Shown piece by piece: positions 10,651 to 20,936 of a DNA stretch of 64,000 bases. The position numbers were made by a program, and so were the translations under genes. The notes under the pieces were generated by a model. The model had not been told where the DNA came from, did not search any database, and worked only from the letters and a program-made list of their open reading frames with translations. How positions within the stretch are numbered: the stretch's first letter is position 1; each line of letters opens with the position of its first letter. The DNA lies in the IMG/VR virus record IMGVR_UViG_3300046542_000248, positions 124,001-188,000 of that record; one strand, 5' to 3'.

Positions 10651-11382
10651 TTGGCTAAGAAGCACCAAAAGATTCTTAACTATATCTATAAAGCTATTGA
10701 TGCTATAGATCCAACTGGTAAGAATACTGAAAGATATAAACAGCATCTGGATGGAATGTCTGATGATGATTTCAAAAAATGGGCAAAAGATTTCCTTAGA
10801 GATGACAATGATAACTTCACTGCTGAAATGGATCAATTTGATCAGAACGTAACTATTGAACAGCTTGTTCATGCTGGGCAAACTGCAAATGTACTTCTTG
10901 AAGATTACATTGTAATGCCTAGTATTAGTGATGATCCTGATGATCCTTATGTAACTATTGAGAAGGTATTATTACTCTACCTGAATCAACGTCGAGTTCA
11001 ACAGACTCTATCTGTAAAGAACCACGTTTCTACTTCCATTAATAAACGTAACCCTAAAACGGGTCAAGTTATTGATGATGATAAAAACTCAAGAACTTCT
11101 GATATGGAAATGTACCAGTTAATCTTCCAAGGAGCTTTTAATAAGCTTGCAGAAGATTATGGCCCAAAATCAGATAACCTTGTAGCTAAGAATGAAATGC
11201 TCTATCAGATTCAGCGTAAGGGTTCAGTATCATTAGCTGAGCTTCCTAATCTTACAAAAGATAAGGTATCTCTTAACTATATGAACTTCCTACTATTAGC
11301 TGCTGGTTACCAATCCGACTTAATTAACGATAAAGAATTACTACCTATCGTTATTGAGCGTGGTGGTCAATTGTATCAATAA
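10651..11382 (+). CDS. RNA polymerase beta C-terminal fragment, probable virion RNAP subunit
   Basis: YLNQRRVQQ..KN..S...RNPKTGQV....NSRTSDMEMYQL...A...AE..GPKSDN resembles beta region I (YxxKLxH..K..R...TxQP..G..GGxRxGEME..L...A...L.E....KSDD). Confidence 0.75.
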   Translation: MAKKHQKILNYIYKAIDAIDPTGKNTERYKQHLDGMSDDDFKKWAKDFLRDDNDNFTAEMDQFDQNVTIEQLVHAGQTANVLLEDYIVMPSISDDPDDPYVTIEKVLLLYLNQRRVQQTLSVKNHVSTSINKRNPKTGQVIDDDKNSRTSDMEMYQLIFQGAFNKLAEDYGPKSDNLVAKNEMLYQIQRKGSVSLAELPNLTKDKVSLNYMNFLLLAAGYQSDLINDKELLPIVIERGGQLYQ

Positions 11383-11399
11383 TTGTATATTATCAGGGC

Positions 11400-11437
11400 A
11401 ACAATCTATTACAGTAAGTACTGAAGTATATATTATT
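11400..11437 (+). promoter_or_regulatory. Tandem late (AACA ATCTAT TA, 11400-11411) and early-type (TATATATTATT, 11427-11437) promoter motifs
   Basis: Both consensus motifs lie upstream of a small ORF. Confidence 0.6.
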
Positions 11438-11455
11438 ATTGTGAGGTGATATTCT

Positions 11456-11581
11456 ATGAATAGCAAGAAACCTCAATCTCCTCAACAACCACCAATTCAA
11501 GGTGGTCTAATGATGGAAGTCGCTGTCGGTGCACAGATCGCTTCCCAGATTATGAACGAATCTCAAGTCAAGAAAGGCTAA
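11456..11581 (+). CDS. 41-aa small protein MNSKKPQSPQQPPIQGGLMMEVAVGAQIASQIMNESQVKKG (not in the ORF track)
   Basis: GAGGTGA RBS, two promoter motifs, and a terminator GCTAAAGC/GCTTTAGC-TTTT at the stop. Confidence 0.7.
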   Translation: MNSKKPQSPQQPPIQGGLMMEVAVGAQIASQIMNESQVKKG

Positions 11582-11741
11582 AGCCATCGCGCTTTAGCTT
11601 TTCTTTATTAAACTATGAAAGGACGTGGGGCTTATAAGAAAATGGTGACAATGATTGTTTCATTATGTTACCCCTGATAAAATTTATGTAATGTGCTCAA
11701 AGCAATATCAAACCCTGATTAAACGTAGGAGGATTTTTATT

Positions 11742-12617
11742 ATGACATCGTACACTTTTAACCATAAGAGGTATAGAGTCACCAATAACTCTAAATTCAT
11801 TGTGTCAACCACTCTATTAGTTATGTTTGTTTTAACTATTGGCTATATGTTAGCATTTGCTGGGTATAAGCATTATACTCAGGTGAAAGAAGATAAAGCT
11901 TATCAAGCTCAACAGGTAGAATTGTCAAACCTCAAAGAAAAATATTCTTTTACTATTAATGACATTTACGTAGAAGCTACTAGTGCTGAAGAAGCCTTGC
12001 AAAAAACTAAAGCTCTCTTGGTAACACAGGCTGAGGAAACTACTAAACAAATTAACATAAACAAAGAGCAGCAAGAAACAATTGTTGCATTGCAAGAAAA
12101 GTATGATGCAAAGATTGAACAAGCTAAGGCAACCACAAAGCAAGACGTAAAGCTCTATAATGAGTATGCTTATGCTATAGAATACCCAGGGTCCGATATG
12201 ACTCTGAGTGATATCAAAATGATTGTGAACATCTCTAAAGAGGAGAAAGTAAATCCTCATTTGTGGCTTAGTCTTGTAGAATTAGAAAGTAAGTTCAAAT
12301 CAAATGCTCGTTCAAACAGATCAACAGCATCTGGTTGGGGACAGGTATTGAAAGGAACTGGCGAATCGCTCTATGAAGACCAGCTTAAACTCGGAAATTA
12401 TAACCATGCCTCGATGGGTATAAATAAAGAAATAAATGCCAAAATGTCTATTCATTATCTAGGTGAACTTATCAATACATCGGGCAGCATTGAAAGAGCT
12501 TTAATCAATTACAATGGTGGAGAATTAGGTGAAAAGTACGCTAATATCGTAAAACAAAACCTGAAAGAGAATACTGGCTTAACTCTATCAAAGGTCACTA
12601 AACCTGACCCTATTTAA
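11742..12617 (+). CDS. Membrane-anchored soluble-lytic-transglycosylase (SLT) domain protein
   Basis: N-terminal TM helix, coiled coil, SLT motifs VELESKF, ASGWGQV, ALINYNGG; AGGAGG RBS before ATG 11742. Confidence 0.85.
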   Translation: MTSYTFNHKRYRVTNNSKFIVSTTLLVMFVLTIGYMLAFAGYKHYTQVKEDKAYQAQQVELSNLKEKYSFTINDIYVEATSAEEALQKTKALLVTQAEETTKQININKEQQETIVALQEKYDAKIEQAKATTKQDVKLYNEYAYAIEYPGSDMTLSDIKMIVNISKEEKVNPHLWLSLVELESKFKSNARSNRSTASGWGQVLKGTGESLYEDQLKLGNYNHASMGINKEINAKMSIHYLGELINTSGSIERALINYNGGELGEKYANIVKQNLKENTGLTLSKVTKPDPI

Positions 12618-12647
12618 GACTTATCATTCCTAATGAGTAATCATTTC

Positions 12648-12695
12648 AAATATATATTATTAATGTGATGACCAAATCATAATGGTCATCACATT
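12648..12695 (+). promoter_or_regulatory. Early-type promoter followed by a perfect 13-bp hairpin
   Basis: AAATATATATTATT, then AATGTGATGACCA-N8-TGGTCATCACATT. Confidence 0.75.
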
Positions 12696-12720
12696 TCTAT
12701 ATTAACCTACTAAAAGGAGA

Positions 12721-13392
12721 TTGACTCGAATGGAAAATATTAAAAGTAATGAAACAACTCTGCTAGAAATTGGACTTACCAATGTTCAAACGCGTGTTAT
12801 TGACCGCATTATTGAAATTCAAAGGTATATGACACAACCATGTGAAAGTAAGATTGAGAAGCAAGTTCTTAAAAAGCTTCCATTAGAAGTACGTAAAACT
12901 CTTATTCTTAACACACCATCACCTAGATGGTTTGGTACTGATTTTCAATATTTTAATCCAACCGTAAAACAACGATTCGAAAAATTACTTAGTAAAGAAG
13001 AAGCAACTATCACACATTTACTTCCTCAGGTTGATAATGAACCGAATTGGCGTGATGAATTAAAAATGTGTTTGATACAAAAGAAAGATCCTATGTTCCC
13101 AGGTGAAAAGATTACCTATCTTGTATTTGAGAATAAAGAAGAAAGTGATAATGCGATTAAAGAAATTCGGGAAGCGCAAACATTCTGTTCAATTGTGACA
13201 GATGCATTACTCCCATTCGCTGAACAATATCATCTTCAAACTAAGAAATTAAAATCTGAGGCTAAACTATTCAAAAAGAAATTTGGAGTTAAGCCTATTT
13301 TCGATATTAAGAATAAACCTAAGTGGTTATACATGTTTGAAGACTGCATGAAATTGCAACGTGATTTCCACTGCCTTGATGTGATCATCTAG
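12721..13392 (+). CDS. Hypothetical protein (start likely ATG 12730)
   Basis: AAAGGAG RBS; 220-aa ORF. Confidence 0.7.
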   Translation: MTRMENIKSNETTLLEIGLTNVQTRVIDRIIEIQRYMTQPCESKIEKQVLKKLPLEVRKTLILNTPSPRWFGTDFQYFNPTVKQRFEKLLSKEEATITHLLPQVDNEPNWRDELKMCLIQKKDPMFPGEKITYLVFENKEESDNAIKEIREAQTFCSIVTDALLPFAEQYHLQTKKLKSEAKLFKKKFGVKPIFDIKNKPKWLYMFEDCMKLQRDFHCLDVII

Positions 13393-13405
13393 GACATACG
13401 TTGGT

Positions 13406-13418
13406 AATATATATTATT
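13406..13418 (+). promoter_or_regulatory. Early-type promoter motif
   Basis: AATATATATTATT followed by an imperfect hairpin. Confidence 0.75.
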
Positions 13419-13489
13419 ATTATGCGATGACTATATATTAGTAACTATCGCGTATATCATACACTATCTATTAAAAGGAGACTGAAACT

Positions 13490-14674
13490 ATGTCTAACGA
13501 ATCCGCAAAACTACTCGGGCAAGAACTGAAAGAAAATATGAGCAAAATCCAAGGTAAAAATGAAGCATTACAAATGAAAATGAAAGCAAGTATTTTTGGC
13601 GTTGGTGCTGGCGGCGGTAATATCGCACATCTTATGAGCTATTTCGATGGCTATGATACAGCAGCTTTAAATACAACACAATCCGACATGGTTGGTTTGA
13701 TGGTTGATCATAGAGTGGTAATTAAAGGTGTTAATGGATCTGGTAAAGATCGTGCATTTGCATCTGATCAATTCAAACTTTCCTATAAATCATTCTTTGA
13801 ACATGACGGAATTAAGAAGCTTATCGAGAACGATTTAATTTTCGTTGTCGGTACAGGTGGTGGTGGAACTGGTACAATCATTTCCATTATGACCGCCGCT
13901 TATCTTAAGAAAGAATATCCAAATAAACAAATCTTCTTTATTGGCATGCTAGGTTCAATTAAAGAAGATAAAACATCGCAGGAAAATATGCGTGAGTTTA
14001 TGTCTGATCTTGAAAATAAACTCAGCGTTCCGTATCTTCTATTCGATAACAATCGTACGAAGAATATGGTTGGCGATCAAGTTTACGATAAAGTTAATAA
14101 CGATATCGTTGACGCAATTCGTGTTCTATCTAAAGATTTCTTCGTTGAGACATCACGGAGTAATATTGACGGTCGAGACTATGCTCGCTTAGCAAGCTAT
14201 GCTGGTTTAACATCCGTAATCAATATTCCCAATCTGAACATCAGCGTGTCGGAAGAAACAATCGACCTTACTGGTCGTATTCAGCAAGCTATTGAAGGTA
14301 GTACAAATATCATCACGGAATCTCCTGAAGCATATGGCTTCTTCATGAATGTTGATGAGGAAGTATATTCGGCTGTGGATACTACATTCCATGATGTTCA
14401 AGAAAAGATTGCTGGAAAACCTTCAAGTGGTCTAGCATTCAAACATCTTCAAAATGCAACAGGACAAGGGCCAGAATTTGCAATGATTGCAACTGGTCTA
14501 TCAGCTCCAATGCAACGCTTTAAAATGATTGATCGTCGTATTTCCGAGCTTGAACAAGTTAAAGAAAAAGAAAAGCTGCCTACAGTTGAAAGAAATTCAT
14601 CCAAACTGCAACTTGCAGGGGATGGAAACTCTAATGGGACTGGGCAAGGTTCTAATGCCTTTGACGGATTCTAA
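13490..14674 (+). CDS. FtsZ/tubulin-family GTPase (PhuZ/TubZ-like)
   Basis: GVGAGGGNIA, ALNT, GSGKD, signature GGGGTGT, FDNN, T7 loop NIDGRD. Confidence 0.9.
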   Translation: MSNESAKLLGQELKENMSKIQGKNEALQMKMKASIFGVGAGGGNIAHLMSYFDGYDTAALNTTQSDMVGLMVDHRVVIKGVNGSGKDRAFASDQFKLSYKSFFEHDGIKKLIENDLIFVVGTGGGGTGTIISIMTAAYLKKEYPNKQIFFIGMLGSIKEDKTSQENMREFMSDLENKLSVPYLLFDNNRTKNMVGDQVYDKVNNDIVDAIRVLSKDFFVETSRSNIDGRDYARLASYAGLTSVINIPNLNISVSEETIDLTGRIQQAIEGSTNIITESPEAYGFFMNVDEEVYSAVDTTFHDVQEKIAGKPSSGLAFKHLQNATGQGPEFAMIATGLSAPMQRFKMIDRRISELEQVKEKEKLPTVERNSSKLQLAGDGNSNGTGQGSNAFDGF

Positions 14675-14691
14675 TCCAAACAGAAAGGTAG

Positions 14692-15819
14692 TTGCCATTG
14701 ATGAAAATCAAGTATAATAACTATACTAACCGAGAACGAAAGCAACAACAGCAGCAGCAGGGTGGGAGACATAACAACTCCCAGCCTCGCATCAAAGAAT
14801 TACGTAAGATCTATGAAAATCCAAAAACATTCCTACGGGAATCACTGGAGGTGATAGAAATTTCAGTTCAAGAACATCTCGAAACCATGTTTAATGATTA
14901 CAAGGAATGGAGAATGGGTAAGAAGAAGCGTCCAGAATATATCTTCAACATGACGCAAGACTTCGCCTTCGTTTCAATCCTTCCTAAGATCGTAAAGAAA
15001 AATTACGATTTCATTATTGAAAATGGTGAAGAGTTTAGCGAGATCATTTCGAATGCAGTAGGCGAACTCAATAGAACTCGTCGTAACCGCTACAAAGAAA
15101 TGGTTGCTATTTATTCAAGTCTCTATGAAGATTTAAACGAGAGAAGGATTAAGAAACTTACTTCTCTAAATATTAAAGGTGTAGATTGGGATGAAGCATT
15201 GAAGCTATGTTTAGTTTCACATGGTTCTCCTGGTCATACAATGATCAACACTCTTAGAATGATGTACAGCACGCTGAAGATCAGCAAGTATCAAGATATC
15301 TATAAAATTCTCCGTAAATTATACGGTAAGAAGGATATGGGTAAAGTTGCTGTATACATCTTACTAGAAAAACGTCCTGATTTCACAAAATCCAATTGGA
15401 TTGATTCAGAACTATATGGTACTCTTACCAGCATCGCTTTGGATGAGATTAATGCTCAGAAAAAAGATGGTGTTAAGACACTGCTAAAGCTATACTGTAA
15501 TGAAAGAAGAAGATCCGAGTTTGAGCAATATCAAAGACGTCGGGTTAACTTCTCTACGATCAATAAAGAAGATTATGCAAAGATCCACAAGGTTGCTAAA
15601 AAGCTTGCCAAGAAAAACGATATGTATCGAGTATACTTGGATAAGTCAGATAGCAAATACAAGCAAGAGCCGGAGAAGGTTCAGTTTAAACAACCTGAAC
15701 AGCCGCAGCAAAATCAATATCAAAATCGTGGTAACAACGATCGAAGATATGATAATCGGGATAACCGTAATAACAATAATCGCCACAATAACCAAAACAA
15801 TGGTCAACGGCGGTACTAA
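14692..15819 (+). CDS. Basic helical protein with Q/N/R-rich low-complexity termini
   Basis: QQQQQQGGRHNN N-terminus; NRGNNDRRYDNRDNRNNNNRHNNQNN C-terminus; directly after the tubulin gene. Confidence 0.75.
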   Translation: MPLMKIKYNNYTNRERKQQQQQQGGRHNNSQPRIKELRKIYENPKTFLRESLEVIEISVQEHLETMFNDYKEWRMGKKKRPEYIFNMTQDFAFVSILPKIVKKNYDFIIENGEEFSEIISNAVGELNRTRRNRYKEMVAIYSSLYEDLNERRIKKLTSLNIKGVDWDEALKLCLVSHGSPGHTMINTLRMMYSTLKISKYQDIYKILRKLYGKKDMGKVAVYILLEKRPDFTKSNWIDSELYGTLTSIALDEINAQKKDGVKTLLKLYCNERRRSEFEQYQRRRVNFSTINKEDYAKIHKVAKKLAKKNDMYRVYLDKSDSKYKQEPEKVQFKQPEQPQQNQYQNRGNNDRRYDNRDNRNNNNRHNNQNNGQRRY

Positions 15820-15893
15820 CCAACCAGTTAAACGAGGGATGAAAATCTCTCGTTTAATTTTTTCTTTGTTTTCATATAAAGGAGGATTACATA

Positions 15894-16163
15894 ATGTCAA
15901 AAAGAATTAAGATACTCAGTGATTATACATCTGCTGATGATCCAAATATTCTCACAGTGTTCACGGATGATCAGGGTGATATTCATATTTCTTTATTTCA
16001 AGGTAATGATGATGAATCTGGTGTTAGAATCGCAGCAAGTGGCACTAGACATACTCCAAGAGTAAGAGAAGCTTTAAGAAATCTAGTTAAAGCATATGAA
16101 GAAGAGTTGAAAGATCCTCATTGTAATCCAATTCTTAAAGCCCTGAATCCCAATATTAAGTAA
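15894..16163 (+). CDS. Hypothetical protein
   Basis: AAGGAGG RBS. Confidence 0.7.
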   Translation: MSKRIKILSDYTSADDPNILTVFTDDQGDIHISLFQGNDDESGVRIAASGTRHTPRVREALRNLVKAYEEELKDPHCNPILKALNPNIK

Positions 16164-16224
16164 TTATCTTTTTATTTATTAACTAACTTAGAAATAGAGA
16201 TAATAATCGAGTATAGAAAGGTAT

Positions 16225-16914
16225 GTGAACCCAATGTTCAGAGTGTATAATCGTGTATCCCAAGAAAGTACAATTAGAGGCTGGCAAGTTGCTAGTGAGC
16301 CTGTTCAAAATCGCACTGATCGTAAACATCATAACATTTGTCTATCTGGAATTGAAAAGGGCATTCGTTTGGCTCTTGATCGTAACAAATATGAAGATCT
16401 AACAGTAGTTGATGCTGGGATGGTCTATCCTAATAGTAATGTATTTACAAAAATGTATTCTATTTATCTTGGTGGTGATCGGTATCTGCCAATCGTAACT
16501 CTAGCTGAAACTCCTGAAGAAAATCGCAATATCTTGCTATTCAATTATGAAACAAACCCTGGTGAGATTATCGCCGATATCGAGTTCAATAACCTTATCC
16601 CAATCTCTCATTACATCAGCAATAAGGATTTCAAATCTCGTATTACTATTGCTGCTATTGATATTGATAATAAGAAAGATATGGGTATCAAACTGAAATA
16701 TGGATTTAACAATGGTCGTGTTTTAGAAGTAGAAGAGATTAATTTCACTAACTACTTCACTATCATGAATGCTGCCAATAGCAAAGCTGCTAATGCTAAA
16801 CCGGTTGAGCATTTCAATATTCACAATTCACATGAAACAGTACCACGAATTGAATCCGTTCGTCTAGAAATTCCTAGAATGGATCTATCTGATATCTGTA
16901 TCAATCCACAGTAA
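16225..16914 (+). CDS. Hypothetical protein
   Basis: 229-aa ORF, AGAAAGG RBS, terminator at ~16925-16960. Confidence 0.7.
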   Translation: MNPMFRVYNRVSQESTIRGWQVASEPVQNRTDRKHHNICLSGIEKGIRLALDRNKYEDLTVVDAGMVYPNSNVFTKMYSIYLGGDRYLPIVTLAETPEENRNILLFNYETNPGEIIADIEFNNLIPISHYISNKDFKSRITIAAIDIDNKKDMGIKLKYGFNNGRVLEVEEINFTNYFTIMNAANSKAANAKPVEHFNIHNSHETVPRIESVRLEIPRMDLSDICINPQ

Positions 16915-16972
16915 TTTACTTAGAGAGATAGGGAGAGAAATCTTCCTATCTCTTATTTAATATTTGGACTGG

Positions 16973-16984
16973 AACACGGAATTA
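16973..16984 (+). promoter_or_regulatory. Late-type promoter AACA-N6-TA
   Basis: AACA CGGAAT TA. Confidence 0.6.
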
Positions 16985-17003
16985 GATACTTACATAGAGA
17001 GGA

Positions 17004-18386
17004 ATGATTATTTTGGGTTTGTTTGATCTGATTGACAAACAGCGTAAGGCTGATAAGAAAGTTGACGATACAGTCGTCACTGAAATGAGTTATCCTACGG
17101 GATTTCTACCGCTTGACTATGCAAACGGTGTTCGTGTTACTTCATATGATAAAAATGACAGACCATTTGCAAAGCAAGATTTGATTGGGATTGTTGGTGG
17201 TACTTTCGTTAGTACTATTGGAATCTCAGGTACAGGTAAATCTGCATTGGCTATCGAGATGTCACTTGCTGGTGTTCATAAATTTGGTGATGTATCTGGG
17301 GTGACTCATTTTGACCTTGAATTAGCAACCACTATTCAACGCCCAATGACGATCTCCAAAATTAAGCCATCATTACTTAAAGATACTTATAAAATTTATC
17401 GTGATAGAGGGGCAGAAGATGTAGTTGACATCTTCAAAACTCATTGCGATGTAAAAGTTCAAAATAGAAAACTCTTCACATACAATACAGGCATTCGTGA
17501 TGTATTTGGTGATGAAATTCATGAACTCTATCCATCATTTGGTCTGATTGATTCCTTTGCCATGTTTAAATCAGGTGAAGTGAACTTAGATAACAAAGGT
17601 GTAGACGGAGTCACAAATAATATGCAAGCGGCTCAAGCTGCTAAATTTAACAAAGCGATTCTATCTCAAATGCTTGCTATCGGTAAGAAAGCAAACGTTG
17701 GTATTATTGCGGTTAACCATATTAACCAAGACGTAAACACTGGCTTTATGCCAAAAGCTAGTCAGCATATGTACTTGAACCAAGGTGAAACAATGCCTGG
17801 TGGTGCTGCTACATTATACTTGGCTAATAACATTATTAAATTGAAACTTCTTAAGAAATACCAGATCTCTGGTAAAACTGATGGCATGGATTATGGTATT
17901 CCTGGCTTCTTGGTTGAAGCTAAGTTTATTAAATCACGTACCAACGCTGCTAACGTTCCAGTAGAACTTGTGTTTGACCAACGTAAAGGTGGTTTCTCCA
18001 AAGTTCTTACTTTATTCCATTTTGCTGTGAAGAATGAACTTCTTCTTGGATCTAACCGTGCTCACTTCCTTCCAGGACTTGAGAGTGTTAAGTTCACTAA
18101 GAAAAACTTCAAAGATGTAGTAATGCAATCTCCTGAAATTTTGGAAGCATTATACATGGTTTGTCTGCCGTATCTTGAAGCTATGCTTTCAACTGATACA
18201 GGTCGCATGAATGCTGTAGAAACTGAATCTGAAAAAGTGGATTCCATGTTCGCGGCTCTTGAAGATCACCAACGTGATATTGAGTTCTACAAGAACCAAG
18301 GTTGGACTGAGTTCTTAAAGGCTGATAGAAAATATCACTATCAACGTAACAAATATGAACAAACTGCAAGTGGTATTTGGCACTAA
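17004..18386 (+). CDS. uvsX: RecA/UvsX-like recombinase
   Basis: YPTGFLPLD, Walker A GISGTGKS, FDLE, LIDS, VNHI, PGG, KSR. Confidence 0.85.
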   Translation: MIILGLFDLIDKQRKADKKVDDTVVTEMSYPTGFLPLDYANGVRVTSYDKNDRPFAKQDLIGIVGGTFVSTIGISGTGKSALAIEMSLAGVHKFGDVSGVTHFDLELATTIQRPMTISKIKPSLLKDTYKIYRDRGAEDVVDIFKTHCDVKVQNRKLFTYNTGIRDVFGDEIHELYPSFGLIDSFAMFKSGEVNLDNKGVDGVTNNMQAAQAAKFNKAILSQMLAIGKKANVGIIAVNHINQDVNTGFMPKASQHMYLNQGETMPGGAATLYLANNIIKLKLLKKYQISGKTDGMDYGIPGFLVEAKFIKSRTNAANVPVELVFDQRKGGFSKVLTLFHFAVKNELLLGSNRAHFLPGLESVKFTKKNFKDVVMQSPEILEALYMVCLPYLEAMLSTDTGRMNAVETESEKVDSMFAALEDHQRDIEFYKNQGWTEFLKADRKYHYQRNKYEQTASGIWH

Positions 18387-18412: not shown

Positions 18413-18459
18413 AAATATATATTATTTATGTGGATAGGAAGCCTTATTCCTATCCACAT
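18413..18459 (+). promoter_or_regulatory. Early-type promoter followed by a perfect 13-bp hairpin
   Basis: AAATATATATTATT, then ATGTGGATAGGAA-N6-TTCCTATCCACAT. Confidence 0.75.
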
Positions 18460-18482
18460 CTTATTATGTAAAGGAGATTTAT

Positions 18483-18857: not shown

Positions 18858-20936
18858 ATGCTTCAACCAGATCAAATTGAAGAACTTGACCGTATTGCTA
18901 GTGACATTAAAAATATTGACCATGCTTTAGGGAGTGGATTACTTATTCCACTTGGAAATAAAGTAAACTCTTCACGGGCTGCATTAGTATTTCAACAAAC
19001 AGGTCAGTCTAAAAATCTTGTTGAACCTGAGATTGCAAGAGTATCTACTGGATATGAGAAAGTATTCGGAGATAGATCAACTTCTTTCCATAAGACTGAG
19101 AAAGAATTTGAAGTCGTTAACAAGATTCAAAAGTTTGGTAATGACTTTGTATATGCCTTAGTCCTTAGAGAAAAAGGTACAAATTATTATGATCTTGTAC
19201 TTAGAAACGAAGTAGAATCCTTTGCTGAATCTTCCGGCGTAAAGATCAATAACACGGTTATTGACTCTATGAATATCGGAGATAAGATTAGAGAAGGTGA
19301 GATTCTACACAAATCTAATTCCTATGATGAGAATATGAATTATCGTCTAGGAATTAATGCTAAGACAATTTATATGACTGATCCTGCAATTGTAGAAGAT
19401 GGGTTTAGAACGTCTGTCCCTCTTGCATATCGTCTACGTTCCACTGATGTTATACCGTATAAAGTTCCTAAGAATACAAATGATATCTTCTTGAATCTAT
19501 ATGGGAATAGTGAAGTATACAAAACGTTCCCAGATATTGGTGAGAAGGTAAAGAATAAGGTTCTATGTGGAAAGCGCAGAATTGATTATAATAATGCACA
19601 GTATATGCTTAAGAGTAAGAATCTCCGTAAAGAGATGTTTGGTGATACTCTTACGTATACTGATGGTACTGTAGTTGATATTGATATCTACTCTAATGTA
19701 CCTATTGATGATGTTCCTACCGATCGGGTAAACGAACAGACTCTTAAGTACATGAAAATGATTAGCAAATATTGGCATGAACTAAGAAAAGTTCTTGGTC
19801 GTATTGTCGATAATCCTGAGAATGAATATTCAGACCAAGTTGGTATTACTTATGCTCGGGCTAAAGATGTCTTGAGTATTGGTAAGACTACTAAGTGGGA
19901 TGATGATGGTTCTATCTTTGATAATATGATCATGTATTTTACAGTGGTCAATACTAAGAAAGCTGTTATCGGTACGAAACTTGTAGGACGCCATGGTAAT
20001 AAAGGCGTAATCTCCGAAATTGTTGAAGAGAAGTATATGCCACGAAGTGAAGATGGTGAATATGCTGAAATCATCTTTAGTGCTCTTTCAGTTATTGGTC
20101 GTCTGAATCCTTCACAGCTATATGAGCTTGAGCTTAACTGGATTGTGGATGAGATTCTTAATGGTAATGTCTCGCAGAAGAAGAAGTTCGATACACTGCT
20201 TGACTTCCTATCCATCTGTAACCCAAATCAAGAAAAAGTAGTGCGTGAACTATATGATTCTCTTGATAAAGCTGAAAAAGAAGTATTTATGAGTCAACTT
20301 ACAACTGAGTTCGTTACATTCCAACCGCCTAGTATGTCGATTAGCTTTGACAACTATGCTAAACTGGTTGAGAAGGTTGAACCTAAGAAGAAACGCTTTA
20401 CAGTTATGGATGAAAAAGGACAAGTCTTTAACATCCAAAACAAACTGATTATGTCTGATTCATATATCTACAAACTGAAACATGAACCGATTACAAAGTT
20501 CTCTGTACGTTCTAAAGGTACTATTAATCCACGTACATTCCTTCCGATTAAATCGCATGCATATAGCAGAGGAACAGCTCTGTTTAATAACCAAGCGATT
20601 CGGATTGGTAATATGGAAATGGATATCCTCAATCTGTGTAACGATCCTGCGGCTATTAACTACTTTACACGATTGTATTGTACATCCGTAATTGGTCGTC
20701 GTGAATTTGCACAGCTACTTGATACAAACATCTTCCAAGATGAAATGGAAATCGAGATGAACAACTCAACTTCTCGTGTAGTAGATCTATTCAACTCTAC
20801 TTTCATGGTATGTGGTATGGGACTACGTTTCGAATATCCAGATAAGAAAGTAAATGACATCTTCCTTGAAGAGATTAAGAACATGGAAAGCAAACATGTA
20901 AAAGTTGTCTTTGCCGGATGGGATAAGTTTAAATAA
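18858..20936 (+). CDS. RNA polymerase beta C-terminal half, probable non-virion RNAP subunit
   Basis: NSSRA, EDG, GTKLVGRHGNKGVIS, MP, GRLNPSQLYE, YIYKLKH, RIGNME. Confidence 0.93.
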   Translation: MLQPDQIEELDRIASDIKNIDHALGSGLLIPLGNKVNSSRAALVFQQTGQSKNLVEPEIARVSTGYEKVFGDRSTSFHKTEKEFEVVNKIQKFGNDFVYALVLREKGTNYYDLVLRNEVESFAESSGVKINNTVIDSMNIGDKIREGEILHKSNSYDENMNYRLGINAKTIYMTDPAIVEDGFRTSVPLAYRLRSTDVIPYKVPKNTNDIFLNLYGNSEVYKTFPDIGEKVKNKVLCGKRRIDYNNAQYMLKSKNLRKEMFGDTLTYTDGTVVDIDIYSNVPIDDVPTDRVNEQTLKYMKMISKYWHELRKVLGRIVDNPENEYSDQVGITYARAKDVLSIGKTTKWDDDGSIFDNMIMYFTVVNTKKAVIGTKLVGRHGNKGVISEIVEEKYMPRSEDGEYAEIIFSALSVIGRLNPSQLYELELNWIVDEILNGNVSQKKKFDTLLDFLSICNPNQEKVVRELYDSLDKAEKEVFMSQLTTEFVTFQPPSMSISFDNYAKLVEKVEPKKKRFTVMDEKGQVFNIQNKLIMSDSYIYKLKHEPITKFSVRSKGTINPRTFLPIKSHAYSRGTALFNNQAIRIGNMEMDILNLCNDPAAINYFTRLYCTSVIGRREFAQLLDTNIFQDEMEIEMNNSTSRVVDLFNSTFMVCGMGLRFEYPDKKVNDIFLEEIKNMESKHVKVVFAGWDKFK

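What the first reader, a model, noticed from the sequence alone, without database searches (positions are those of the whole stretch)
13406..15865. Tubulin/FtsZ GTPase co-transcribed with a basic protein bearing Q/N/R-rich disordered tails
Seen in sequence: a discrete two-gene unit (early promoter, tubulin with intact T7 loop, 375-aa K/R-rich protein, terminator). The partner has poly-Q and N/R/D low-complexity ends. Established: PhuZ positions phage DNA or nuclei in phiKZ-like phages, and TubZ works with TubR/TubY adaptors. Inference: a DNA-positioning system in a probable Firmicutes jumbo phage, with a novel adaptor that may form condensates. No chimallin is recognisable in this window.
Basis: partly seen in the sequence, partly recalled or inferred. 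Interest (0 to 1): 0.6.

Follow-up and report, generated by a model that had tools for sequence, protein, structure and literature searches.

The report
Phage TubZ-like tubulin with conserved partner
An uncultured soil jumbo phage that lacks a phage-nucleus shell carries an early-expressed tubulin gene always followed by a basic helical-repeat protein from a large unannotated family, which points to a two-part phage cytoskeleton with a new kind of partner.

Summary
An AR9-type early promoter (13405-13424), a 394-aa tubulin (13490-14674), a basic partner (true start ATG 14701, 372 aa) and a terminator (15826-15859) form one discrete unit.

The tubulin has intact T1, T4 and T7 motifs. It is closest to Clostridium phage c-st TubZ (Z 31.9), not PhuZ (Z 25.5). 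The complete 247-kb genome comes from a rhizosphere metagenome, and its nearest cultured relatives are AR9/PBS1. It has no chimallin, TubR, TubY, ParB or integrase.

The partner has no Pfam, PHROG or PDB relative. It nevertheless belongs to a large metagenomic family (235 representatives at 50% identity) of basic HEAT-like alpha-solenoids.

In 17 distinct loci, down to 25% tubulin identity and with changed flanking genes, the partner lies directly downstream of the tubulin. There is one exception. This argues for a functional pair.

The poly-Q and N/R/D tails are real but lineage-specific: only 5 of 150 members have a long C-tail. The condensate idea therefore has no family-level support. Binding between the two proteins is inferred, not shown; the complex prediction gave no verdict.

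Verdict: a new variant of phage tubulin systems with a new partner family.

The parts
13405..13424 (+). AR9-type early (virion RNAP) promoter, TAATATATATTAT-(6N)-G, with the predicted +1 G at 13424
   Evidence: It matches 12 of 13 positions of the AR9 early consensus (PMC5312081). It is one of 29 such sites in the genome. The motif is conserved upstream of the tubulin in L003, L004, L010 and L011, with a one-base variant in L012.
13421..13454 (+). Stem-loop or palindrome starting at the predicted transcription start: a possible 5' UTR structure or operator
   Evidence: MFE is -11.6 kcal/mol. Relatives carry a palindrome of different sequence at the same place (alignment A4). Its function is not tested.
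13474..13480 (+). Ribosome-binding site AAAGGAG of the tubulin gene
   Evidence: Read directly from the sequence.
13490..14674 (+). TubZ-like tubulin/FtsZ-superfamily GTPase, 394 aa. Globular core is about residues 29-358. A disordered linker (366-388) precedes a conserved C-terminal peptide ending in F.
   Evidence: Sequence families: Pfam Tubulin matches all 13 diverse members (best 1.2e-17; the window protein scores 9.3e-5, below the gathering cut-off). phrog_17961, the c-st TubZ family, matches 13 of 13. PDB: the profile's best hit is c-st TubZ at 1.3e-19. Model: AF2 pLDDT 81.6. Structure search: Foldseek and VIA rank c-st TubZ first, with TM 0.84 and Z 31.9.
14162..14179 (+). T7 catalytic loop, N225-x-D227-x-x-D230
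   Evidence: Invariant in 20 homologues. D227 and D230 are invariant even at 25% identity.
14683..14688 (+). Ribosome-binding site GAAAGG of the partner gene
   Evidence: Read from the sequence. It lies 12 nt upstream of the ATG at 14701.
14701..15819 (+). Partner protein, 372 aa: a basic alpha-helical repeat protein of an unannotated family
   Evidence: The start is set by homologues. There is no Pfam, PHROG or PDB sequence match. The AF2 model has pLDDT 79.9, with the core above 90. The family has 235 representatives at E<=1e-3.
14800..15642 (+). Conserved two-lobed all-alpha core of the partner (residues 34-314 of the 372-aa protein)
   Evidence: Alignments A1, A3 and A5. Y192, R272, R283 and Y295 (P0002 numbering) are nearly invariant across 64 members. 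The nearest shapes are generic HEAT/ARM/MA3 solenoids: Z at most 6.7 and TM below 0.5.
14701..14799 (+). Variable basic N-terminal tail containing the Q6 run (Q15-Q20, nt 14743-14760)
   Evidence: pLDDT is below 50. The sequence is not conserved even among close homologues.
15643..15816 (+). Lineage-specific Q/N/R/D-rich C-terminal tail, 58 aa
   Evidence: pLDDT is below 50. Among close relatives only P0004 has a similar tail. A C-tail of 25 aa or more occurs in 5 of 150 family members.
15826..15869 (+). Intrinsic-terminator-like hairpin with a T-run closing the two-gene unit
   Evidence: 15-bp stem, 4-nt loop, T-rich tail.

Best explanation
This is an early-expressed, two-gene cytoskeletal module of an uncultured, AR9-related, chimallin-less jumbo phage from soil.

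Gene 1 encodes a TubZ-like tubulin whose GTP-binding and T7 catalytic residues are intact. It should therefore polymerise into dynamic GTP-dependent filaments.

Gene 2 encodes a basic, two-lobed HEAT-like alpha-solenoid from a large, previously unannotated family that travels with this tubulin lineage. The most likely role is a filament-associated factor. It would dock on the tubulin, plausibly on the conserved C-terminal peptide that follows a disordered linker. It would then either couple the filaments to a cargo, most plausibly the incoming or replicating phage DNA or its replication factory, or control filament nucleation and turnover. In that role it would stand in for TubR/TubY, which this genome lacks.

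Shown: the gene anatomy, the promoter class by analogy with AR9, the fold and motifs of the tubulin, the deep conservation of the gene pair, and the absence of chimallin, TubR and TubY.

Inferred: polymerisation, physical binding, the docking site and the cargo.

The Q/N/R-rich tails are a recent decoration of this sublineage, not part of the core mechanism.
For: Anatomy:
- One early promoter, a 26-nt junction with an RBS, no internal terminator, and a terminator after gene 2.

Tubulin:
- Invariant T1, T4 and T7 motifs.
- Closest to c-st TubZ by profile (1.3e-19), by Foldseek (TM 0.84) and by VIA (Z 31.9, rmsd 2.5 A over 294 residues).
- A conserved terminal peptide follows a linker with pLDDT below 50.

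Pairing:
- In 17 distinct loci the partner lies directly downstream on the same strand.
- These include L008, L019, L020, L021 and L025, where the tubulin is only 25-34% identical and the flanking genes differ.

Partner family:
- The family is basic throughout: median pI 9.15, and 87% of members are above 8.5.
- No transmembrane-like segment.

Genome:
- No chimallin in this genome or in the complete relative G001, with the phiKZ control positive.
- No TubR or TubY family member.
- The partner is unrelated to TubY (hhalign probability 0.1%).
Against: - No direct evidence of interaction exists. The complex prediction gave no verdict.
- The close clade is collinear over many genes, so much of the synteny there is inherited rather than independently maintained. 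Only about five deep lineages give independent support.
- One partner-family member (L023/L024) has no tubulin within 5 kb.
- The partner has no recognisable DNA-binding motif, and no centromere-like repeats lie nearby.
- The fold resemblance to HEAT repeats is at noise level for helical proteins.
- The promoter differs from the AR9 consensus at one position, and in AR9 a single mismatch at another position was inactive.
Confidence: 0.5

Rival explanations
1. The partner is purely a regulator of tubulin assembly (nucleator, bundler, capper or inhibitor, in the manner of TubY or the Zap/SepF/EzrA factors of FtsZ) and carries no cargo.
For: - It occupies the position downstream of the tubulin that TubY holds in c-st.
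- It has an alpha-helical scaffold fold with no HTH.
- No centromere-like repeats lie nearby.
- The tight co-conservation fits a regulator as well as it fits an adaptor.
Against: - It has no homology to TubY or to any solved FtsZ regulator.
- The strongly basic surface conserved across the family is not needed for a pure regulator of an acidic tubulin, although it could serve that purpose.
Confidence: 0.25
2. The module is a c-st-style partition system that segregates the phage genome as a plasmid prophage or pseudolysogen. The partner would act as a non-homologous replacement for the TubR centromere-binding adaptor.
For: - The closest solved relative is the partition tubulin of plasmid prophage c-st.
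- The partner is basic.
- AR9/PBS1-type phages are known for carrier or pseudolysogenic states (own knowledge; PMC7824862 discusses tubulins in pseudolysogeny).
Against: - The operon is driven by a virion-RNAP-type early promoter, which points to expression immediately after injection in lytic growth.
- There are no iteron or centromere-like repeats.
- The whole genome has no TubR, ParB or tyrosine integrase.
Confidence: 0.12
3. The adjacency is inherited gene order without functional coupling. The partner would be an unrelated early protein, for example a nucleic-acid-binding or host-takeover factor.
For: - The close clade is collinear across the whole block from RNAP subunit to UvsX.
- One family member lacks an adjacent tubulin.
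- No interaction is demonstrated.
Against: - The pair survives where the neighbours have been replaced (L008, L021, L025).
- The gap stays short and the strand the same at 25-34% identity.
- Other flanking genes, including the 223-aa, 89-aa and 229-aa ORFs, come and go.
Confidence: 0.13

Closest known systems
TubZ of Clostridium phage c-st, in the TubZ-TubR-tubS/tubC system with TubY (PDB 3v3t, 4xcq)
   Same: - It is the best sequence and structure match: profile E 1.3e-19, TM 0.84, Z 31.9, about 20% identity.
- All 13 diverse tubulins of this lineage hit the same PHROG (phrog_17961).
- It is phage-encoded.
- The tubulin gene is followed by a second gene of the system.
   Different: - This locus has no TubR wHTH gene, no TubY (MerR) gene and no centromere repeats.
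- The partner here is an unrelated 280-residue alpha-solenoid.
- Expression comes from a virion-RNAP early promoter in a phage with no integrase or ParB, not from a plasmid prophage.
PhuZ of phiKZ-like nucleus-forming phages (Chimalliviridae)
   Same: - It is a jumbo-phage tubulin in a genome with split multisubunit RNA polymerases.
- There is a weak PHROG hit to phrog_4733 (8e-10).
- The presumed role is positioning phage DNA during lytic infection.
   Different: - There is no chimallin in the genome.
- The PhuZ C-terminal domain model PF22334 does not match.
- PhuZ-201 ranks only about 50th structurally (Z 25.5), behind TubZ, CetZ and FtsZ.
- No dedicated partner gene is described for PhuZ; in phiKZ the downstream gene is a phosphatase-family protein.
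TubZ of Bacillus plasmids (pBtoxis TubZ, B. cereus TubZ/RepX) with TubR and tubC
   Same: High structural similarity (Z about 30), including the N-terminal helix and the long C-terminal helix. In these systems a flexible C-terminal tail serves as the adaptor-docking site (the tail's role is from own knowledge).
   Different: - Sequence similarity is low: RepX scores only 1e-5 against the profile.
- These are plasmid-borne systems with a wHTH TubR and iterons, none of which is present here.
HEAT-repeat tubulin-binding domains of eukaryotes (e.g. TOG domains of XMAP215)
   Same: The partner's lobes resemble generic HEAT/MA3-type helical repeats. A TOG domain appears among the weak hits (2qk2, Z 5.6).
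   Different: The similarity is at noise level for helical proteins, so there is no evidence of homology. This is an analogy only.

Membership tests
Tubulin/FtsZ superfamily | GTPase domain with the T1 loop and the T4 signature GGGTG(S/T)G | tested here: met
   GxGxxGxN at residues 37-44 and GGGTGT at 124-129 are invariant in the family. Pfam PF00091 matches all 13 diverse members, best 1.2e-17; the window protein alone is below the gathering score.
Tubulin/FtsZ superfamily | T7 synergy loop with catalytic acidic residues | tested here: met
   N225-x-D227-x-x-D230 is invariant.
Tubulin/FtsZ superfamily | Two-domain tubulin fold | tested here: met
   AF2 pLDDT is 81.6. All 727 aligned PDB tubulin-superfamily chains give Z>=8, and the best is 31.9.
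TubZ (TubZRC type III partition systems) | A tubulin closer to TubZ than to FtsZ, CetZ or PhuZ, with an N-terminal helix and a long C-terminal helix | tested here: met
   c-st TubZ gives Z 31.9, Bt and Bc TubZ about 30, CetZ 29-30, FtsZ about 27 and PhuZ 25.5. The alignments cover model residues 16-375. The margins are modest and no phylogeny was built.
TubZ (TubZRC type III partition systems) | An adjacent TubR winged-helix centromere-binding adaptor | tested here: not met
   phrog_17403 (c-st TubR) has no match in the genome. The upstream 223-aa ORF has no HTH hit and is absent in relatives. Divergent TubR proteins could be missed.
TubZ (TubZRC type III partition systems) | A centromere (tubC/tubS) of iterated repeats next to the operon | tested here: not met
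   There are no tandem or iterated repeats in 11300-17100 other than promoter motifs.
TubZ (TubZRC type III partition systems) | Carried by a plasmid or plasmid prophage | tested here: inconclusive
   There is no integrase or ParB, and the promoter is of the early virion-RNAP type. The lifestyle of this uncultured phage is unknown.
PhuZ / nucleus-forming phages (Chimalliviridae) | Chimallin (ChmA) shell protein encoded in the genome | tested here: not met
   PF25677 and phrog_4795 have no match in the complete 246,901-bp genome or in the complete relative G001. The phiKZ control was found. A very divergent shell protein cannot be excluded.
PhuZ / nucleus-forming phages (Chimalliviridae) | PhuZ-type C-terminal domain (Pfam TubZ_C_2, PF22334) | tested here: not met
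   phiKZ PhuZ matches at 1.7e-37. There is no match in this genome at E<=10.
PhuZ / nucleus-forming phages (Chimalliviridae) | An acidic C-terminal tail that inserts into the neighbouring subunit to build three-stranded filaments | not testable with these tools
   The tail here has net charge 0 and ends in a conserved F. Filament architecture needs an experiment.
TubY (modulator downstream of c-st tubZ) | MerR-type HTH plus coiled coil, homologous to CST188 | tested here: not met
   hhalign probability is 0.1%. phrog_20864 is absent from the genome.
HEAT/ARM alpha-solenoid repeat proteins (for the partner) | Significant structural or sequence match to HEAT/ARM repeat families | tested here: inconclusive
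   The best Z is 6.7 and TM is below 0.5, both below the stated noise level for helical proteins. No Pfam HEAT hit was found in 64 members.

The most novel reading that the evidence does not exclude
This is a third kind of phage tubulin system, distinct from TubZRC and from the PhuZ-chimallin nucleus. It would be a TubZ-like filament with an obligate HEAT-like, basic adaptor from an undescribed family of more than 200 sequence clusters. The system would organise phage DNA or replication factories during lytic infection of Gram-positive hosts by jumbo phages that build no protein nucleus.
Probability: 0.35. Interest if true: 0.78.

Novelty: new variant of a known kind. Interest (0 to 1): 0.62.

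Why it matters
Phage tubulins are known in two settings. TubZ works with TubR and a centromere to partition plasmid prophages. PhuZ centres the chimallin nucleus.

Here a tubulin lineage sits in AR9-related jumbo phages that have multisubunit RNA polymerases but no chimallin. It is tied to a partner family with no annotation in Pfam or PHROGs and no solved structure.

If the two proteins work together, this gives three things. It names a large orphan family. It provides a tractable two-protein system for asking how bacterial tubulin filaments are coupled to cargo without a winged-helix adaptor. It also indicates that intracellular positioning by tubulin is not restricted to nucleus-forming phages.

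Tried and rejected
Complex prediction: complex prediction (full-length tubulin with partner residues 31-322, own alignments) returned 'no answer', score 0.00, and its controls were not run. Two earlier attempts did not complete. This is evidence neither for nor against binding.

Partner in deposited phages: tblastn of the partner, of the distant member P0060 and of the L021 tubulin found nothing. megablast of the locus also found nothing.

Partner and tubulin in cultured relatives: profiles searched in AR9, PALS_2, LPJP1, phiR1-37 and phiKZ found nothing. The tubulin profile did not even find phiKZ PhuZ, so that search is insensitive and proves little.

Wider locus sampling:
- Scans with A6 in IMG/VR and A2 in metagenome contigs returned only the close clade.
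- P0107 and P0060 have no IMG/VR relatives.
- The L023/L024 contigs could not be searched whole, so that exception is unresolved.

Fold searches for the partner: Foldseek PDB, VIA wide, Atlas by shape and Atlas by features gave only generic helical-repeat similarity. BFVD gave three uncharacterised 'Myoviridae sp.' proteins, which are probably distant family members.

Rejected ideas:
- That all early transcripts start with a stem-loop: mean MFE is -5.3 against -6.0 for random 50-mers.
- That the 229-aa downstream gene is part of the invariant module: it is missing from that position in L019, L021 and L025.

Sequencing runs: only one DNA run, from a rhizosphere metagenome and probably the source sample, holds the locus. 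Read laying was therefore not used, and there is no RNA evidence.

Not done: no phylogeny was built, because reference sequences for CetZ, FtsZ, Bt-TubZ and PhuZ were not at hand as loci. At 15-20% identity a tree would also be weak. Profile E-values and structural Z-scores were used instead.

Full report
1. WHAT IS THERE

The window is bases 124001-188000 of a 246,901-bp IMG/VR virus record that is rated 100% complete.

In 13405-15869 the + strand carries, in order:
- A promoter-like site, TAATATATATTAT-(6N)-G, at 13405-13424.
- A stem-loop at 13421-13454.
- An RBS.
- A 394-aa ORF at 13490-14674.
- A 26-nt junction containing an RBS.
- A second ORF ending at 15819.
- A terminator-like hairpin with a T-run at 15826-15859.

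The ORF list starts the second gene at TTG 14692 (375 aa). All 18 homologues begin at the MKIK that corresponds to ATG 14701, so the protein is 372 aa. There is no terminator between the two genes.

The promoter call can be checked against experiment. The early promoters of Bacillus phage AR9 are used by the virion-packaged RNA polymerase. Their consensus is AAATATATATTAT-(6N)-G(+1) (PMC5312081). The site here matches 12 of 13 positions with the G correctly spaced. The relative L003 matches perfectly. The genome holds 29 such sites, and the 8-mer core is enriched two-fold in the window, mostly in intergenic DNA on the coding strand. One caveat: in AR9 a single mismatch at a different position abolished activity.

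2. WHAT PHAGE THIS IS

- The RNAP beta-like subunit at 18858-20936 is 34% identical to AR9/PBS1, about 30% to the Staphylococcus S6-like phages and Listeria LPJP1, and 31% to Yersinia phiR1-37.
- A second RNAP fragment, an SLT lysin and a UvsX-like recombinase flank the locus.
- The only public run holding the DNA is a rhizosphere metagenome.
- GC content is about 35%, and the RBSs are strong GGAG-type.
- Taken together, 'Firmicutes-type jumbo phage' is reasonable, but the host is not shown.
- Chimallin models PF25677 and phrog_4795 find nothing in the whole genome. They also find nothing in the complete 207-kb relative or in AR9, PALS_2 or LPJP1, whereas phiKZ is found.
- No tyrosine integrase or ParB is present.

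3. THE TUBULIN

The family alignment of 20 sequences has invariant T1, T4 and T7 motifs, the last as N225, D227 and D230. D227 and D230 stay invariant in a set reaching 25% identity.

| Reference | Profile E-value vs PDB | VIA Z |
|---|---|---|
| c-st TubZ | 1.3e-19 | 31.9 (rmsd 2.5 A, 294 residues) |
| Bacillus TubZ / RepX | 1e-5 (RepX) | about 30 |
| CetZ | 3e-15 | 29-30 |
| FtsZ | about 1e-10 | about 27 |
| PhuZ-201 | 1.6e-5 | 25.5 (rank 50) |

- The AF2 model (pLDDT 81.6) gives the same ordering by Foldseek, with c-st TubZ at TM 0.84.
- phrog_17961, which all 13 diverse members hit, is the c-st TubZ family.
- The PhuZ C-terminal domain model does not match.
- The protein is therefore TubZ-like, not PhuZ. 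The structural margins are modest, and I built no tree.
- After the last helix (341-356) comes a linker with pLDDT below 50. It is followed by a conserved terminal peptide ending in a nearly invariant F. In FtsZ and TubZ this architecture presents a docking peptide to partners (own knowledge).

4. THE PARTNER

- It is strongly basic: pI 9.75 and net charge +27, with the core alone at +15. The tubulin has pI 5.3.
- It has no Pfam, PHROG or PDB sequence match. The same holds for 64 diverse family members.
- The word search found 19 close relatives.
- Because the protein remained open, I ran the exhaustive profile search. It found 235 representatives at E<=1e-3 and 87 at E<=1e-10, most of them 280-430 aa.
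- The AF2 model (pLDDT 79.9, core above 90) is all-alpha with two lobes at about residues 30-176 and 177-320. Both tails are disordered.
- Structure searches return only generic HEAT, ARM, MA3 and MIF4G solenoids at noise level. BFVD adds three uncharacterised metagenomic phage proteins.
- It has no hydrophobic segment.
- It is unrelated to TubY.
- Across 150 full-length members the basic character is general: median pI is 9.15. The tails are not general. Only 5 members have a C-tail of 25 residues or more, and the query's 58-residue tail is the longest. The common class of about 290 aa has neither tail.
- Among close relatives only P0004 shares a Q/N-rich tail.

5. ARE THE TWO LINKED?

- In every locus with a tubulin of this lineage and enough downstream sequence, the partner follows directly on the same strand. 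That gives 17 distinct pairs.
- The close clade is collinear over many genes, so those cases are not independent.
- The informative cases are the deep ones: L008, L019, L020, L021 and L025. There the tubulin is 25-34% identical, the partner is 22-26% identical, and the surrounding genes differ.
- Genes beside the pair come and go. The 223-aa and 89-aa ORFs are absent in L003. The 229-aa gene is lost from that position in L019, L021 and L025.
- One exception exists: a family member in L023/L024 with no tubulin within 5 kb.
- The parallel divergence of the two proteins (Spearman 0.87) is expected from shared descent. I count it only as consistent.
- The complex prediction gave no verdict.

6. 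MECHANISM

The best-supported reading is a filament-forming TubZ-like GTPase with a dedicated filament-associated protein, expressed immediately after infection.

Whether the partner is a cargo adaptor or an assembly regulator cannot be decided from sequence.
- For an adaptor: the basic surface, together with the absence of TubR.
- For a regulator: the position equivalent to TubY, the scaffold fold and the absence of a centromere.

A c-st-like prophage-partition role is less likely. The promoter is of the virion-RNAP early type, there are no repeats nearby, and the genome has no integrase, ParB or TubR.

The condensate idea rests on tails that the family does not share. It remains possible for this one phage, but it is not part of the conserved mechanism.

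7. NOVELTY

Phage tubulins and their two known systems are established (PMC7950403, PMC13282480). [quoted passage not shown]

I found no description of this partner family in Pfam, PHROGs, the PDB, deposited phage genomes or the papers searched. I therefore rate the finding as a new variant of a known kind, with a new partner family.

Noticed in passing
whole genome G000; in the window at 12648, 13405, 18413, 20999, 21693, 24368, 49152, 56987, 62937: The genome has 29 copies of a promoter motif essentially identical to the AR9 early (virion RNAP) consensus AAATATATATTAT-(6N)-G. The RNAP beta-like subunit is only 34% identical to AR9's, so promoter specificity appears far more conserved than the polymerase sequence.
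   Followed up: partly
window 12662-12695, 13421-13454 and about 18428-18460; the equivalent position in L003, L004, L010 and L012: Three neighbouring early promoters are followed at the predicted +1 by strong stem-loops (-17.5, -11.6 and -19.7 kcal/mol). Downstream of the tubulin promoter, relatives keep a palindrome of different sequence. This may be a 5' UTR structure or an operator. It is not a general feature of the 29 early promoters.
   Followed up: partly
window 16225-16914 (+): A 229-aa protein with no Pfam or PHROG hit is conserved just downstream of the pair throughout the close clade. It is weakly detectable in the same position in L020 and L008, but not in L019, L021 or L025. It could be an accessory third component or merely a syntenic neighbour.
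   Followed up: partly
window 12721-13392 (+) and 15894-16163 (+): A 223-aa ORF with its own early promoter at 12648 and an 89-aa ORF flank the module but are absent from relative L003. They look like lineage-specific insertions of unknown function.
   Followed up: partly
L023 and L024, 5001-5978: A partner-family gene (E 2e-13 to the profile) sits in a related RNAP-encoding phage contig with no tubulin within 5 kb. The tubulin may have been lost or relocated.
   Followed up: partly
L021 2977-3342: A gene with an Acb2/Tad1-hairpin Pfam hit (a family of anti-CBASS/Thoeris sponges) lies about 500 bp upstream of the tubulin in a distant relative.
   Followed up: no
window 10651-11382, 18858-20936, 11655-12617, 17004-18386: The module lies among split RNAP beta/beta'-like subunit genes, an SLT-domain transglycosylase with an N-terminal hydrophobic segment, and a UvsX-like recombinase. 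The block is collinear across the clade.
   Followed up: partly
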